A stretch of 63,454 nucleotides of DNA, filler included, from Octopus bimaculoides (lineage: Eukaryota), in the NCBI RefSeq assembly GCF_001194135.2. It is 6 parts of 4 records of this genome, joined end to end, with 100 filler letters (N's around TTAATTAATTAA, not from the genome) between each part and the next. Parts side by side here need not be neighbours in the genome. Positions count along the whole stretch, not along the records: positions 10,224 to 20,812 come from NC_068981.1; 5 more parts are not named here. One strand, written 5' to 3'. This document shows positions 10,910 through 18,156 of the stretch, piece after piece. The translations under genes were made by a program, and so were the position numbers. Within the stretch, counting starts at the first letter, position 1. Each line of letters opens with the position of its first letter. The notes under the pieces were generated by a model, which was not told the DNA's origin, made no database searches, and worked only from the letters and a program-made list of their open reading frames with translations.

Positions 10910-11068
10910 TCAGTTAACATTGTATCAAAGATGTGTGAAGAGATATTGCACTCTGAACGATTAGTAAAAGTTTTAGCCTATGTCTTGGCTATTTTCAATT
11001 ATCTAAATTCTTCTGGAAATAGAAAATTTCATGCACTGCCTGGTTTTGATCTGAATTACCTCAGTAAT
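10910..11068 (+). CDS. Formin FH2-domain exon (phase 0/0, 53 aa)
   Basis: Acceptor ttttgcttttctttttcAG and donor GTaagt. Translates SVNIVSKMCEEILHSERLVKVLAYVLAIFNYLNSSGNRKFHALPGFDLNYLSN, matching the FH2 pattern C-EE-x3-S-x2-L-x2-L-x3-LAxGNYxN...GF-x-L-x2-L. Confidence 0.88.
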
Positions 11069-11224
11069 GTAAGTATTAAGAGGCACCATTATATTTCTGT
11101 TATTATCATTGAATACTGAACTAACTATACTTTTATAAGTATTCTCATTGCTTGGATCTCTTCTTTTCTTTATTTGTGCCTCCTTCTCACATATTCTTCC
11201 TACTCAAGATCTCTACCTGTGTAT

Positions 11225-11309
<85 letters not shown>

Positions 11310-11312
11310 TGT

Positions 11313-11460
11313 GCAGGTATGGTTGTGTGGTAAGATGTTTACTTCCCAATCACACAGTTCTGGATCCAGTCCCATTGCATGCCAACTTGGGCAAGTGTCT
11401 TCTGCTATAGCCCTGGGCTAACCAAAGCTTTATGAGTGGATTTGGTAGACAAAACTTGAA
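11313..11460 (+). mobile_element. SINE family A 5' head
   Basis: gcaggtatggttgtgtggtaag...ggatccagtccc...cttgggcaagtgtcttctgctatagcc; CpG-decayed. Confidence 0.75.
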
Positions 11461-11464
11461 AGAA

Positions 11465-11750
11465 ACCCCTCATCATCATCATCATTGTTTAATGTCTGCC
11501 TTCCAGTTTGACAGGAGCTGGCCAAGCATGAGCTTGCACCATACTTCTGTGATTGTTTTGGCAGGGGTTTTACAGCTGGATGCCCTTCCTAACACCAACC
11601 ACCCTGCAGAGTGGATTGAGTGCTTTTAGTGTGGCACAAGTACAGGCAAAGTCAGTTTTGGCAAGTTTTTTTTATGGCTGGGTGCTCTTCCAAATGCCAA
11701 CCACTTTACAGTGTGAACTGGATGCTTTTTTTACATAGCATCAGCACATG
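11465..11750 (-). mobile_element. RTE-LINE 3' UTR fragment
   Basis: catcatcattgtttaatgtctgcc tail, and cagctggatgcccttcctaacaccaacc shared with the copies at 46405 and 60050. Confidence 0.65.
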
Positions 11751-12659
11751 TATGTGTGTGTGCATTGTATTGTATGTATGTATGTATGTATGTATGTATG
11801 TATGTATATGTGTGTGTATCGTATGTATGTATGTATGCATGTATGTATGTGTGTGTGTGTGAATAGTGTATGTATATATGTGTGTGTGAATATTGTATGT
11901 ATATATGTGTGTGAATATTGTATGCATATATGTGTGTGTGTGTATATTGTATGTATGTATGTGTGTGTATTGTTTGTATGTAGGTATATATGTGTGTGTC
12001 TTGTATGTAATTATATATATGTATGTGTCTGTGTTATTGTCTCTTGATCTCAGGAGATAATTGTAAACGTGTGTTATCATGTAAGTGGTGTCCTTTGCTT
12101 ATCTTCCATGAAAACATGACTGATCGTGGGGAAAATATTAACCTTACTTGGAAACAGGTGAGGTTGGCTACAGGAAAGGCATCTGCCTCAGCAAAATTCT
12201 ATCTGATCATGTAAGCATGGAAAAGTGGAAACTAAAGTGATGATGATGATGATGATGGTGATGAGGATAACATTGGTGATGATGACCAGCAATGAAGAGG
12301 AGGTTGAGGCAGAAGAGGCAGTTATGTAATATGGTATTTGTGAAGCTATTGCCTGATATGTCAACGATTTTCATCTTATTGTTCACAGTATAGAGCTGAA
12401 ACAGACTGATTGTATGGAGTATTGACCTACCAGGGCATAGATCTGCTGAAAATGTCTTGTGTTCTTTGATATTACGTTCTAATTCTGCATACTTCAGTTT
12501 ATGTAATTATTTCAGTAGGTGTCTACATTGCTTAGTTTAACACCACCAACTGGCACTTTTGGTATATTTAATAAAGTCCACCCAATTACAAGTTTTCAGG
12601 CTAGAATTCTGATTTGAAGATATCTTCCACCTTTCCACCAGGTCTTGTAAACCTCTACA

Positions 12660-12995
12660 CCGGAGGTTCTCAACCATTTTTTATCTATGGACCCCCTTGA
12701 TTACTATTTTATTCTGGTGGACCCCACTAGACATTTGATGTTTAAAAAATTAGTTTTATAGAAACTTCTTTCAATATTACTATTTTGATTTTCACACATT
12801 AACTTGTATAGGTTAAACTACATAAAATGCTAGAAAAAAAAAACCAAGCTGTTTCTTGAAATAAATACATCTAAAGCAAAAATTTTTCTGGGACCCTTAA
12901 AATACTATTGTGGCTCCCTGACTTATTATTTTGTATAGACTCCACAAAATCTTATATGAACTCTCAGGGGCTATTTGGACTCTAGTTGACACTAT
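12660..12995. mobile_element. hAT-like MITE (degenerate)
   Basis: Left end ccggaggttctcaacc resembles hAT CAGGGGTTCTCAACC termini, with repeated ggacccc motifs; right end is degenerate. Confidence 0.5.
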
Positions 12996-14857: not shown

Positions 14858-14974
14858 GTAAGTTTTTTTCCTTTTTTTTCTTGTCTTTGTTTTGTTCTGT
14901 TGGATTGTTAAATTCAATCAGCTTCTTTTTTTCCCATTTATTTAAATCCTTATTTTTCATATAGTGAATATGCA

Positions 14975-15090
14975 TGTCCAAGTGGTTAGGGTGTTGCTCT
15001 CATGATTGCCAGATTGTGGGTTCAATTCCCAAACCAGGCAGCATATATTCTTGAGCAAAACCTTTCGCATTGCTGTAGTGTTGTGTGGGG
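14975..15090 (+). mobile_element. Degenerate tRNA-derived SINE head
   Basis: agtggttagggtgttgctctcatgattgccagattgtgggttcaattcccaaacc...ttcttgagcaaaac. Confidence 0.6.
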
Positions 15091-15389
15091 ACCTGCATGT
15101 GTCAGAATAGACCTGGTGTTTCCTCTGCATGTAATAAAAGGTGACTAAAAGAGGCTGAGGTTGTAAGATTTGTACTATAAACCCATAAAACACTCACCAG
15201 CAAAGACTACCCCAAACAGACCCATAACCTGGAAGGTTGTTGCCTGAGTGGTGCAAAAGTGCCATCTGCTAGGAGTAGGGAATCACTAGCAAATGGTGGA
15301 TGCTGCAGCACAGTGTTACAGCACATGACCCCCATGCTGCTGCTGCTGCTACTACTTCTGCTATTACTACTTATTTTCCATCACCAATT

Positions 15390-16440
15390 TTAACAAATTA
15401 GCCCATAATATATTCTCCTTCATTGTTTATGACATCTTGTCAGTGATCCACTAACTTGTCAACGTCTTGGTACTAGAAATCACTGGATCTTGACTCAGGA
15501 ATTCATCTAGCCATGTTTACAACTCTGTGTTGTTGTTGAATGAAAAGCCTCAGACTATTGAAGAGTGACTTAGAACTGATAATCTGAAAGTGCTATATAA
15601 GGAGAATATGATGGGTGTAGATAAAACTTCCAATATAAGCTCTTGAATAATATAATTGCTCAAATTAGCAATGTGGTGGTAAACGTCATGTTGAAGAAGC
15701 ATATCATGTCACCAATTGGGTCATTTCAGATATATTGCCTCAATGAGCCAATACATTTGCAGGTATAAAATTCTGCGTTTACTGTGTGGTTATTTTCAAG
15801 TTCCTAATTCCACCAAATGCAGATCATTTTCTTGTATGGATACAATTATGGTTTGCTTTGAGGTGCTACTTACTTTCTAGGATTCTTCCCTCTGCTTCAT
15901 ATTTATGTAAAGCCCTTATTTTCATTGCTAGTGAGGATGTAAAAAAAAAATCTCCGTTTGTAAACATGACTAACCTGGTGTTGAGCAAGAAACTGAAGGT
16001 GATAGAGGAGTGCTGGAGTTTGTCTCTTTAGTTCCAAGCTTGTGTCACCCATGCACTGTGTTTTTGGATTTTACCCATCAAATGAAGTTGATAGGTGATA
16101 TTATCATAAGAACATCCTATCTATTGGATCAGTTCCTTAGTGGATTGGCATGGAACCTCATGGATAAGCTGGTTCATTGACACCTCATTGAACTGAACAA
16201 GTCAGCCAGAATGCAGAAAATCTGTGATGTTGAATTTCTACTCCTTGAAACATGAAAAAACATTTCTATACATTTCTTTCAGTGTTTGCATCTTATCTGT
16301 ACGTAGTACAAGCATCTTGAGTGGCTTTGACAGTTTTGGAACTTTGATTGAAAGCAAAGGGAAGTCCTACACTGCAGATATCAACAACCATCACCAAATT
16401 CCGAACCACATGAAGCCACTGTTCACATAGTGTTCTTGGT
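15390..16440 (-). mobile_element. Near full-length mariner transposase relic, antisense in a formin intron
   Basis: Minus-strand remnants in the expected order: FAFNQSSKTVKATQ (HTH), SAWVTQ (WVP motif), KKMICIWW, LLQHDVYHH, SPYIALSDY (YSPDLAPSDY motif), INNEGEYI; many stops. Confidence 0.8.
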
Positions 16441-17334
16441 TAGGAATCAAAACCTGAAACAATACACACTTCTGTGCTAGAAACAAAGTTTAACTTCATT
16501 GTCAAAAGGCTTCCTATTTACTCCATATATGTTATTTTTTGCATTGTATCAAGTAATTTTCTTCAGATTTTTTCTTCCTTCGATTTTCAAGCTTAATGAT
16601 AGTTAATACCTCGTTAGAATTTTGTCATATTAGTTATTTATAAATATTCATTTATCAATGATTAAATTAGGAATCAATATTTTGTAAATATATTAGAAAA
16701 TATTTACATTTTGGCCAACACTCTAAGTCTGCTGCTGGTTCCATTGCATGTAGTGTAAGAATGAATGAGAATATCAAAATGAAAGTTCTTGTGTTAAAAT
16801 CTACTACAAGCATTTCAGTTTTGTATTTAGGCAAAATGCCTCATTCTAGATGCTCCATTTATCTTAGTTTTTACAGATGGACATCAGCACTTTTGTGTAT
16901 GTTGTATGTGATAAATTTCTATGTGCTATGGTTTGCAACATAATTTCCTTCCTACACTAATCACTGCCAGATCTCTTATCCCAACTCAAATCTACAATTC
17001 CAGATGATTTATTCTGGATGTACTTTGATGTATAAACAGGCTGACTAAAAGGAAACCATGCATGGTTTTAACTGTACTGAAGCTGAATGAGACCTAACTC
17101 AGGCAAAATTATTTGTTGTTTGTGAGCCTCATATGATTTCTCTGAAAATTGTAATTCTGAAATTGATTTAGAGCTTAGCTAGAATATATTCTTACATGTC
17201 CTGTAAATTCACTGTCATCAATTCACCACAAGGTAAATTCACCATCATCAATTCACTGTTTTCTTTTTTTGTTTTTTTTTTCCTATAAAATAGTTTTTAA
17301 CTATTACTGGTGAGATGTTATGAATATATTTTCT

Positions 17335-17570
17335 CAGTGAAATTTCCTCACAGTATGCCATGCATGAGAAGACTCATCAAGTCAAGTGAAATCGTAGTTG
17401 TGGATGATGCTGGCACCCATGCCAGTGTCACACAAAAGACACCTGTGCCAGTGGCACATAAAAGGTACCCATTACACACTTGGAGTGGTTGGCATTAGGA
17501 AAGGCATCCAGCTGTAGAAACCATGCCAGCAAGGAAAGCAGACACTAAATGATGATGATGATGATGAATC
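17335..17570 (+). mobile_element. RTE-LINE 3' end fragment
   Basis: YAMHEKTHQVK* followed by the shared 3' UTR and a (GAT)n tail. Confidence 0.65.
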
Positions 17571-18052
17571 AAATATGAACAAAGGGATGGCTGTAGGAAT
17601 AGTAAAGAAGTTTGCTTTCCTTTCACGTCTCCATGCATTATCACATTATTACCTTGGGCAAGTAACTTCTACCTTGGCTTTAGGTTGACCCAAATCCTGA
17701 GAGTAAAAGGGAGCCAATAGAAATTGAGTGGAAACCCCCCACAAAAGGCCAGTACCTACTCTTGTGTAGTAAACTTTTTTAACATCACCATTTGACCCTT
17801 GGGTACCTTTTGTAGTCTCCACTCTGTTGCAAGTACTTGTACCAGATCTCCTAACTCATGATATCATAATGTCTGTCACTTATCATTTTTTCCACTCTTT
17901 CTCTGCTGCCAATCTAGGGAAACCCTGTAAAATGTCATGACCATTACCCTTCATCCTCTGAGTAACCTATCAAAGACAAAAAGTAATAATTTATATCTTT
18001 AGATCTCAATTAGAATAACAACATATAATATACCTGATTTGTTTTTCAATAG

Positions 18053-18156
18053 TCTGGAAACAAACAATGGCAAATATAAAAAATTTGCTCGCATCGATTG
18101 AAAAGAGAATGAAAAGATATTCAGAAACAGATGCCAAATTCTTTGCAGATGTCAAG
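18053..18156 (+). CDS. Formin FH2-domain exon (phase 1/0, 35 aa with split codon)
   Basis: Acceptor ttgtttttcaatAG and donor AAG|GTaaac. (V)WKQTMANIKNLLASIEKRMKRYSETDAKFFADVK; phase matches the upstream exon and the end resembles the FH2 D-K-F helix. Confidence 0.8.

What the first reader, a model, noticed from the sequence alone, without database searches (positions are those of the whole stretch)
10910..18156. Hidden, highly divergent formin gene (three spliced FH2 exons)
The ORF track shows only fragments of exons 1-2, each running on into intron. Three exons with canonical splice sites and matching phases (0, 1, 0) join into a stop-free 142-aa FH2 C-terminal half. It keeps the FH2 scaffold but does not clearly fit the DIAPH, DAAM, FMNL, FMN, INF, FHOD or delphilin signatures as I recall them. 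It may be one of the invertebrate-retained subtypes (MWHF, PHCF) or an orphan, lineage-specific formin. The flanking exons are not in this block.
Basis: partly seen in the sequence, partly recalled or inferred. Interest (0 to 1): 0.75.

Follow-up and report, generated by a model that had tools for sequence, protein, structure and literature searches.

The report
Octopus PH-domain formin gene exons
The three exons are real and encode the middle of the actin-assembling FH2 domain of an Octopus bimaculoides formin, but the gene is already in public annotation (mis-named "diaphanous homolog 2") and belongs to the known PHCF formin subtype, so it is a fast-evolving member of a known family and not a hidden or orphan gene.

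Summary
Exons 10910-11068, 14695-14857 and 18053-18156 have AG/GT borders and join into a stop-free 142-aa peptide. It hits Pfam FH2 above the curated cut-off (47 bits, E 2.7e-12).

The piece is Octopus bimaculoides chromosome DNA. The same junctions are used in XP_014788078.1, XP_052823137.1 and UniProt A0A0L8FPF0, so the gene is not hidden.

It is not an orphan and not a diaphanous formin. An exhaustive HMMER search finds its best relatives to be PH-domain plus FH2 proteins: first a Sepia esculenta transcript, then bivalves and gastropods, then deuterostomes, a cnidarian and a choanoflagellate. In a 140-sequence tree it sits with the Sepia-type proteins (100% bootstrap) inside the clade that holds every PH-bearing formin (84.5%). 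That clade contains Pruyne's named PHCF proteins. Five intron positions match the Haliotis PHCF gene.

It is unusually divergent: about 34% identity to the nearest relative, a Sepia-type cuttlefish protein, with GNxMN changed to FNYLN.

The public models are fragments, apparently split by assembly gaps. One FH2 exon is missing on each side, and the upstream 475-aa model appears to carry the FH1 region.

Verdict: a new, fast-evolving member of a known kind, of low to moderate interest.

The parts
10224..10909 (+). 3' end of the intron between the upstream FH2 exon (exon B, outside the piece) and exon 1. The piece starts at an assembly gap.
   Evidence: The piece equals L001 17990-28578 and is flanked by N runs. 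Exon B lies at L001 13415-13593.
10910..11068 (+). FH2 exon 1 (159 nt, 53 aa: SVNIVSKMCEEILHSERLVKVLAYVLAIFNYLNSSGNRKFHALPGFDLNYLSN). It carries the altered GNxMN motif (FNYLN) and the conserved GF.
   Evidence: HMM hit E 7e-15. Both bounding intron positions match the Haliotis PHCF gene.
11069..14694 (+). Phase-0 intron, holding a (TG)48 microsatellite, an ATGT-rich minisatellite and a SINE-like repeat copy.
14695..14857 (+). FH2 exon 2 (163 nt: LDSIRGISNYTVLKVLKCHLEDDNDNTLQEFPEDLKSLLQCEPFSIKSLAVSLE plus 1 nt). The Arg in LDSIRG sits at the position of the conserved actin-binding Lys (mDia1 K994).
   Evidence: HMM hit E 9e-5. Intron positions conserved.
14858..18052 (+). Phase-1 intron with interspersed repeat copies.
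18053..18156 (+). FH2 exon 3 (104 nt: (V)WKQTMANIKNLLASIEKRMKRYSETDAKFFADVK).
   Evidence: HMM hit E 5e-3, colinear with the other exons. Intron positions conserved.
18157..20812 (+). 5' part of the next intron. XP_052823137.1 reads through the donor here (VN, stop at 18163-18165). The piece ends at an assembly gap, and no further exon was detected in it.

Best explanation
The window piece holds three consecutive internal exons of the Octopus bimaculoides orthologue of the PHCF formin subtype (PH-domain-containing formin, Pruyne 2016).

Gene structure. In the 36-kb locus the gene runs as follows:
- a proline-rich FH1 exon that ends in the FH2 lasso;
- one FH2 exon that was not found, probably in an assembly gap;
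- exon A and exon B;
- the three window exons;
- one 28-29-codon exon that was not found, probably in a gap;
- a terminal exon whose stop codon falls right at the end of FH2.
The public annotation splits this gene into an upstream 475-aa model and a 250-aa model.

What the exons encode. They encode the 'post' and adjacent helices of the FH2 domain.

Inferred mechanism, from what is established for FH2 domains. Two FH2 chains form a head-to-tail ring that nucleates actin filaments and rides their barbed ends, while FH1 feeds in profilin-actin. In this subtype, N-terminal PH domains would tether the protein to membranes, taking the place of the Rho-GTPase-regulated GBD/DID...DAD switch of diaphanous-type formins.

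Divergence. The cephalopod lineage of this subtype evolves very fast and has changed otherwise invariant positions.

Shown versus inferred. Shown: the exons, FH2 identity, the species, the existing annotation, the PHCF placement, intron conservation and the divergence. Inferred: actin-assembly activity, PH domains in the octopus protein itself, and that the missing exons lie in gaps.
For: - Exons and FH2 identity: the 142-aa peptide scores 47 bits against Pfam FH2. The 277-aa six-exon composite scores 100.2 bits, E 1.8e-28, over profile positions 79-326.
- Source and annotation: 100% identity to XP_014788078.1, XP_052823137.1 and A0A0L8FPF0 of O. bimaculoides. The locus is CM046601.1:63.12 Mb.
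- Relatives: an exhaustive HMMER search of 1.84 billion representatives gave 713 hits. The best is P0005 (E 4e-43). The next are bivalve and gastropod proteins (E about 1e-29 to 1e-22), then Ptychodera, Antedon, a lizard, Hydractinia and Salpingoeca urceolata.
- Domain architecture: Pfam finds PH plus FH2 in these relatives, and in the molluscs FH2 ends within about 10-20 residues of the C-terminus. A local PH profile hits 35 of the 51 clade members and none of the 89 outside.
- Tree: NJ tree of 140 FH2 domains over 268 columns with 200 bootstraps. Octopus + P0005 + P0168 is supported at 100%, inside the PH-bearing clade at 84.5%. DIAPH2, INF2, FMN1 and FHOD references fall outside.
- Link to the published subtype: lasso strings printed for Pruyne's PHCF proteins match clade members. 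Sp LOC100890634 matches P0026 at 22 of 22 residues, Cg LOC105340863 matches the oyster protein P0016, and Md LOC103097295 matches P0089.
- Nearest relative: P0168 comes from the Sepia esculenta RNA-seq run SRR31864756.
- Intron positions: five positions are the same as in the Haliotis cracherodii PHCF gene. The 28-residue hole in the octopus model equals exactly one Haliotis exon. The FH1 exon ends 8 residues after the lasso W/V column in both species.
- Terminal exon: the TAA stop follows directly after ...FIRDYINIT.
- Conserved residues: all 22 columns invariant across the 10-sequence alignment are kept, including the knob Ile in AQNVMILM.
Against: - PH domains could not be examined in the octopus gene itself. 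The 5' part lies beyond the DNA I could fetch, and the stored record shows no Pfam hit for the upstream 475-aa model.
- Similarity between the FH1/lasso exon and the Sepia-type protein P0005 is not significant by BLASTP (E 8.4 for that segment). The assignment rests on a short motif (LKHFPVPNI against LKHFYVPNI), its position, and the conserved intron site.
- In the NJ tree the cephalopod trio branches at the base of the PH-bearing clade and is not nested among the molluscs. Pruyne (2017) warns that very divergent FH2 domains can be drawn to PHCF by long-branch attraction.
- Two FH2 exons were not found in the sequenced DNA.
- No octopus transcript or congeneric orthologue turned up in the protein collection.
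- I had no named DAAM, FMNL, MWHF or delphilin references in the tree.
Confidence: 0.85

Rival explanations
1. It is a diaphanous-type (DIAPH) formin, as the RefSeq names 'protein diaphanous homolog 2(-like)' say.
For: Among solved structures the best match to the 142-aa peptide is the mDia1 FH2 domain (E 1.3e-6), while Bni1 is only marginal. RefSeq uses the diaphanous name.
Against: PH-bearing formins match far better (E 4e-43 to 1e-22). The named DIAPH2 proteins I obtained fall outside the 84.5% clade in the tree. The closest relatives, the Sepia-type proteins, show PH and FH2 and no Drf_GBD, Drf_FH3 or DAD hit. The octopus reading frame stops right after FH2, leaving no room for a DAD. No PHCF structure turned up in the Protein Data Bank search, so the mDia1 hit may simply be the nearest solved FH2.
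Confidence: 0.03
2. It is an orphan, lineage-specific formin or an MWHF-type formin outside the PHCF subtype, and its grouping with PHCF is a long-branch artefact.
For: It has the longest branch in the clade. It keeps only 24 of the 44 columns that are at least 80% conserved in other PHCFs, where other members keep 31-44. Its basal position in the clade and the published warning about long-branch attraction to PHCF are also consistent with this.
Against: The Sepia-type sister proteins (100% bootstrap, with shared rare substitutions) have a Pfam-significant PH domain. They also align with mollusc PHCFs along the N-terminal region outside FH2. Five intron positions plus the FH1-exon end match the Haliotis PHCF gene. 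Like the mollusc PHCFs, the frame ends at the end of FH2.
Confidence: 0.05
3. The octopus copy is a decaying or truncated gene (a pseudogene or partial duplicate). On this view the two missing exons are really lost and not hidden in assembly gaps.
For: Two exons expected from the Haliotis and Sepia-type comparisons were not found in the sequenced DNA. The newest RefSeq models end by reading into introns. No assembled octopus transcript or Octopus sinensis/vulgaris orthologue appeared in the protein collection. It is the most divergent member sampled.
Against: All seven recognisable exons have open frames and canonical AG/GT borders in colinear order, and the stop codon is at the expected place. 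All 22 alignment-invariant residues are retained. A sequence this diverged with no constraint would be expected to carry stops or frameshifts. Each missing exon falls in an interval that contains large N runs: 4496 and 537 nt upstream, 1453 and 82 nt downstream. The Sepia-type transcripts are assembled full-length in several RNA-seq runs.
Confidence: 0.1

Closest known systems
PHCF subtype of metazoan formins (PH-domain-containing formins; Pruyne 2016, PMC5047451; Pruyne 2017, PMC5628938), e.g. Crassostrea gigas LOC105340863 and S. purpuratus LOC100890634
   Same: The FH2 falls in the same clade as these proteins. The gene structure matches a gastropod PHCF at five intron positions plus the end of the FH1 exon. 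FH2 lies at the extreme C-terminus with no DAD or WH2 tail, as in other mollusc PHCFs. The nearest relatives carry an N-terminal PH domain.
   Different: It is much more divergent. It keeps 24 of 44 subtype-conserved positions, against a median of 40. The otherwise invariant Gly of GNxMN is Phe, an invariant Pro and two near-invariant Glu are replaced, and the first lasso Trp is Val. The Sepia-type proteins share these changes. PH domains are not yet demonstrated for the octopus protein itself.
P0168 (822 aa, from Sepia esculenta RNA-seq run SRR31864756) and the 90%-identical P0005 (805 aa, run SRR21372856, species not identified)
   Same: These are the closest relatives of the octopus sequence (100% bootstrap). 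They share LAIFN in place of LAIGN and LKHF(Y/P)VPNI in the lasso, and the C-terminus ends at the end of FH2.
   Different: P0005 is only 34% identical to the octopus sequence over 277 aa. They also differ at the conserved Lys position, which is His in P0005 and Arg in octopus. The Sepia-type proteins are complete (PH-FH1-FH2), whereas the octopus models are fragments.
Diaphanous-related formins (mDia1/DIAPH1-3), the name RefSeq gives this gene
   Same: An FH2 domain with the conserved knob Ile and a basic residue at the mDia1 K994 position. mDia1 is the best hit among solved structures.
   Different: The FH2 does not group with DIAPH2 in the tree. There is no DAD. The nearest relatives have PH domains where diaphanous formins have GBD/FH3.

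Membership tests
Formin (FH2 domain, Pfam PF02181) | Significant match to the FH2 profile above the curated cut-off | tested here: met
   The 142-aa window peptide scores 47.0 bits (cut-off 34.8), E 2.7e-12. The six-exon composite scores 100.2 bits, E 1.8e-28.
Formin (FH2 domain, Pfam PF02181) | Conserved actin-binding knob Ile (mDia1 I845 / Bni1 I1431; residue numbers from my own knowledge) | tested here: met
   The Ile in AQNVMILM is an invariant column in the 10-sequence alignment. It lies in exon A, outside the window piece.
Formin (FH2 domain, Pfam PF02181) | Conserved post Lys (mDia1 K994 / Bni1 K1601; residue numbers from my own knowledge) | tested here: inconclusive
   The position holds Arg (LDSIRG, exon 2) when aligned to mDia1 RDTKS. 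Other mollusc PHCFs have K or R here, and P0005 has His. The positive charge is kept in octopus.
Formin (FH2 domain, Pfam PF02181) | GNxMN motif | tested here: not met
   The motif reads FNYLN. Both Asn are kept, but the Gly is Phe, although it is 100% conserved in the 48 other PHCFs. The Sepia-type proteins share the change.
Formin (FH2 domain, Pfam PF02181) | Proline-rich FH1 region directly upstream of FH2 | tested here: inconclusive
   A Pro-rich exon on the same strand at L001 850-1214 ends ...PLPPPLPPKHS...LKHFPVPNINKNL|gt and has the same exon end as in Haliotis. BLASTP similarity to P0005 is not significant, and splicing to the FH2 exons is not shown.
PHCF formin subtype | FH2 sequence groups with the PHCF FH2 domains | tested here: met
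   The sequence lies inside the 51-member clade (84.5% bootstrap) that holds all 35 PH-bearing proteins and Pruyne's named PHCFs or their near-identical relatives. This is an NJ tree only, and it lacks labelled DAAM, FMNL, MWHF and GRID2IP references.
PHCF formin subtype | Pair of N-terminal PH domains and/or a C-terminal PH domain | not testable with these tools
   The octopus 5' exons lie beyond the retrievable 10-kb flank. The upstream 475-aa model was not found by my one search with its last-exon translation, and its stored record shows no Pfam hit. A C-terminal PH domain is absent, because the stop follows FH2 directly, as in other mollusc PHCFs. The Sepia-type relatives have an N-terminal PH domain scoring 34.6-39.6 bits against a cut-off of 25.1.
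PHCF formin subtype | No GBD/DID/DD and no DAD/WH2-like tail | tested here: inconclusive
   A C-terminal tail is absent. The N-terminus of the octopus protein was not available. The Sepia-type relatives and the mollusc PHCFs show no Drf_GBD, Drf_FH3 or DAD hits.
DIAPH (diaphanous-related formins) | FH2 groups with DIAPH FH2 domains | tested here: not met
   The DIAPH2 references (P0172, P0177) fall outside the clade, at distances of 1.95-2.67 compared with 1.18-1.24 to the Sepia-type proteins P0168 and P0005.
DIAPH (diaphanous-related formins) | C-terminal DAD autoregulatory motif | tested here: not met
   The terminal exon ends ...FIRDYINIT followed by TAA, at the end of FH2.
MWHF formin subtype | FH2 groups with MWHF; Drf-type GBD-DID-DD N-terminus | not tested
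   I had no labelled MWHF FH2 sequence. Indirectly, the Sepia-type relatives have a PH domain and no Drf_GBD or Drf_FH3 hit.

The most novel reading that the evidence does not exclude
Cephalopod PHCF formins may have remodelled the FH2 dimer interface. The first lasso Trp is replaced by Val, and the otherwise invariant Gly of the post motif GNxMN is replaced by the bulky Phe. Octopus and the Sepia-type proteins share both changes. This could be a compensatory swap that changes how the two FH2 chains lock together, and with it ring flexibility, processivity or nucleation. In that case the fast evolution would reflect a new function and not decay.
Probability: 0.2. Interest if true: 0.45.

Novelty: new member of a known kind. 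Interest (0 to 1): 0.25.

Why it matters
There are two practical results.

First, a RefSeq gene named 'protein diaphanous homolog 2' in O. bimaculoides is really the cephalopod PHCF formin.

Second, what is annotated as two adjacent genes (a 475-aa model and a 250-aa model) is most probably one gene broken by assembly gaps, with two FH2 exons unaccounted for.

On the biology: to my knowledge, PHCF is the least studied of the nine animal formin subtypes, is absent from placental mammals, and has no biochemically characterised member. The cephalopod branch is its most divergent sampled lineage and alters residues that are otherwise invariant. If those changes are adaptive, these proteins would be a natural experiment on the FH2 lasso/post interface. 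None of this opens a long-standing question, so the interest is modest.

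Tried and rejected
- A word-indexed protein search with the FH1-exon translation, meant to recover the upstream 475-aa model, found nothing. The 5' part of the gene therefore stayed out of reach.
- The last word-indexed search, with a PHCF alignment, was swamped by proline-rich candidates and returned only two close clusters. It did supply named DIAPH2, INF2, FMN1 and FHOD references.
- HMM and tblastn scans of the whole 36-kb locus found no further exons beyond the six colinear FH2 exons. All other hits had E > 2 and were not colinear.
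- A brute-force scan of 258 AG...GT(or GC) in-frame candidate exons between exon 3 and the terminal exon found no match to the missing 28 residues (best E 0.67, implausible sequence).
- tRNA and Rfam scans of the piece found nothing.
- A literature search for SRR21372856, the source of P0005, found nothing, so the species of P0005 itself is unknown. It is 90% identical to P0168, which comes from a Sepia esculenta run.
- I did not run structure prediction, because the Pfam match already settles the fold and a monomer model cannot test the dimer-interface idea.
- I considered and rejected the DIAPH, orphan and MWHF readings (see the rival explanations).

Full report
**1. The observation**

The piece (window 10224-20812) is AT-rich eukaryotic DNA, with GC about 0.30-0.46 and several microsatellites.
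- exon 1, 10910-11068 (159 nt);
- exon 2, 14695-14857 (163 nt);
- exon 3, 18053-18156 (104 nt).

Each is preceded by a polypyrimidine tract and AG, and followed by GTAAGT or GTAAAC. Joined, they give 426 nt, which is 142 codons without a stop, with intron phases 0, 1, 0. The peptide matches Pfam FH2 at 47.0 bits, E 2.7e-12, above the gathering cut-off of 34.8, over profile positions 183-305 of 372. Among solved structures it aligns best with the mDia1 FH2 domain (E 1.3e-6).

**2. Where the piece comes from and whether the gene is hidden**

The peptide is 100% identical to XP_014788078.1, 'protein diaphanous homolog 2-like' of Octopus bimaculoides (164 aa). The same cluster holds three more entries:
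- XP_052823137.1, 'protein diaphanous homolog 2' (250 aa, from the chromosome-level assembly);
- UniProt A0A0L8FPF0 (137 aa);
- a 112-aa upstream fragment.

The gene is therefore already annotated, though only as fragments.

The locus is CM046601.1:63,116,973-63,152,903 (L001). The window piece equals L001 17990-28578 at 100% identity and is bounded on both sides by runs of N.

**3. Gene structure around the piece**

A profile built from the closest homologues finds six colinear FH2 exons in L001:
- exon A, about 9989-10140;
- exon B, 13415-13593;
- the three window exons;
- a terminal exon, 32904-32993, which ends ...FIRDYINIT followed by TAA.

The six-exon composite of 277 aa scores 100.2 bits against Pfam FH2.

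Further upstream, at L001 850-1214 on the same strand, is an exon with AG and GTAAGT borders. It encodes a proline-rich stretch ending ...PLPPPLPPKHSAPKTTGLHSMKELKHFPVPNINKNL. It belongs to an annotated 475-aa upstream gene model, which ends by reading into the intron.

The motif LKHFPVPNI matches LKHFYVPNI at the FH1/FH2 boundary of the closest relative. The exon also ends 8 residues after the lasso W/V column, exactly as in the Haliotis gene. BLASTP alone does not make this similarity significant, so I rate the link as probable and not proven.

Two expected exons are missing. One, of about 37 codons, should lie between the FH1 exon and exon A. The other, of 28-29 codons, should lie between exon 3 and the terminal exon. 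Neither was found in the sequenced DNA. Both intervals contain large N runs: 4496 and 537 nt upstream, and 1453 and 82 nt downstream.

**4. What kind of formin it is**

An exhaustive HMMER search of 1.84 billion cluster representatives gave 713 hits.
- The best is P0005 (805 aa, E 3.9e-43, 34% identity over 277 aa).
- Next come proteins of Sinanodonta, Mercenaria, Solemya, Haliotis, Lymnaea and Candidula, at E between 1e-29 and 1e-22.
- After those come Ptychodera, Antedon, a lizard, Hydractinia and the choanoflagellate Salpingoeca urceolata.

Pfam finds an N-terminal PH domain plus FH2 in most of the mollusc relatives, with FH2 at the extreme C-terminus in all of them. In Ptychodera and the sea-urchin-type protein P0026 it finds a C-terminal PH domain.

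I built a neighbour-joining tree of 140 FH2 domains over 268 columns with 200 bootstraps.
- The octopus sequence groups with P0005 and P0168 at 100%.
- That trio lies inside a 51-member clade (84.5%) that contains all 35 proteins with a PH hit.
- None of the 89 sequences outside the clade has a PH hit.
- The named DIAPH2, INF2, FMN1 and FHOD proteins are all outside.

This architecture and taxonomic spread are those of the PHCF subtype described by Pruyne (2016, 2017). To tie the clade to that name by sequence, I compared the lasso strings printed in Pruyne's supplementary alignment with my hits:
- the S. purpuratus PHCF matches P0026 at 22 of 22 residues;
- the C. gigas PHCF (LOC105340863) matches the oyster protein P0016;
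- the opossum PHCF matches P0089 at 20 of 22 residues.

Gene structure gives independent support. Five intron positions in the octopus FH2 coincide with those of the Haliotis cracherodii PHCF gene. In alignment columns they are 823, 882, 939, 994 and 1029 in octopus, against 823, 882, 940, 994, 1029 and 1058 in Haliotis. The 28-residue hole in the octopus model corresponds to exactly one Haliotis exon of about 87 nt, phase 0-0.

**5. The closest relatives are cuttlefish**

P0168 is 822 aa and 90% identical to P0005. It was assembled from run SRR31864756, which the data-availability statement of a Sepia esculenta transcriptome paper lists (PMC11917092). The trio is therefore a cephalopod PHCF lineage, assuming P0005, whose own source run I could not identify, is also a cephalopod. 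The Sepia-type messenger RNA is full length (PH-FH1-FH2) in several RNA-seq assemblies.

**6. How divergent it is**

Forty-four columns are at least 80% conserved among the 48 other PHCF FH2 domains. Octopus keeps 24 of them and the Sepia-type proteins keep 28. Every other member keeps 31-44, with a median of 40.

The distance from the hemichordate PHCF is 1.06-1.18 to other molluscs, 1.38 to P0005 and 1.63 to octopus.

Octopus and the Sepia-type proteins share several derived states:
- Gly to Phe in GNxMN, where Gly is 100% conserved elsewhere;
- loss of an invariant Pro;
- loss of two near-invariant Glu;
- Val at the position of the first lasso Trp.

The core is nevertheless retained. All 22 columns invariant in the 10-sequence alignment are kept, including the knob Ile (AQNVMILM). 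The conserved post Lys position holds Arg, as in several other PHCFs.

**7. Mechanism**

By homology (inferred, not tested), the encoded segment is the post and neighbouring helices of an FH2 domain. FH2 domains dimerise head to tail, nucleate actin filaments and track their barbed ends. The upstream proline-rich exon would recruit profilin-actin.

The subtype has PH domains where diaphanous-type formins have a Rho-regulated GBD/DID...DAD switch, and the octopus frame has no room for a DAD. Membrane or phosphoinositide targeting is therefore the likely mode of regulation. PH domains could not be checked in the octopus gene itself.

**8. Rivals**

- DIAPH membership, the RefSeq name, is contradicted by the tree, by the architecture of the nearest relatives and by the missing DAD.
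- An orphan or long-branch artefact is unlikely, given the PH domain and N-terminal homology of the Sepia-type sister proteins and the conserved introns.
- A decaying gene cannot be fully excluded. Two exons were not found, the newest models read into introns, and no octopus transcript appeared in the collection. Against this stand the intact frames, canonical splice sites, the retained invariant residues and the coincidence of the missing exons with assembly gaps.

**9. Verdict**

The exons are real and the FH2 is really divergent. The gene is already annotated and belongs to a described subtype. What is new here:
- the reclassification from DIAPH2-like to PHCF;
- the evidence that two adjacent gene models are one gene;
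- the finding that cephalopod PHCFs are the fastest-evolving branch of the subtype, with changes at otherwise invariant interface residues.

Novelty: a new member of a known kind. Interest: 0.25.

Noticed in passing
L001 1-1258 (upstream of the window piece; L001 coordinate = window coordinate + 7766): The annotated upstream 475-aa gene ends in a proline-rich exon (L001 850-1214) that closes with an FH2-lasso-like motif, then reads past a GTAAGT donor to a stop at 1256-1258. It looks like the 5' half of the same formin gene, split off because of assembly gaps.
   Followed up: partly
window 11341-11473 and 18445-18577: A 133-nt inverted repeat pair, 79% complementary, lies in the introns on either side of exons 2 and 3. 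The arms look like copies of a common octopus interspersed (SINE-like) element, and related copies occur elsewhere in the 36-kb locus. Inverted intronic repeats flanking exons could form double-stranded RNA.
   Followed up: no
window 17408-17470, 19169-19231, 19327-19389; window 17446-17528 versus L001 31458-31540: Further interspersed repeat copies. One is a 63-nt family with three copies (70-79% identity to the reference copy). The other is an 83-nt stretch that is 98.8% identical to an inverted copy in the next contig of the scaffold.
   Followed up: no
window 11218-11313, 11748-12032, 20372-20417, 20662-20732: A (TG)48 microsatellite, an ATGT/TG-rich minisatellite of about 280 nt, and two (TA)n runs, all intronic.
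   Followed up: no
window 18157-18165: RefSeq model XP_052823137.1 does not use the exon 3 donor. It reads on for two codons (VN) to a TGA in the intron, whereas the older XP_014788078.1 splices to the terminal exon and skips one exon-sized segment. Neither model is likely to be the true 3' structure.
   Followed up: partly
L001 1395-5890, 6975-7511, 11154-12345, 15083-15182, 16084-17989, 28579-30031, 30744-30825, 34235-34658: Eight runs of N make up 10,190 of the 35,931 bases of this locus. The chromosome-level assembly is still very gappy here, which limits any gene model.
   Followed up: yes
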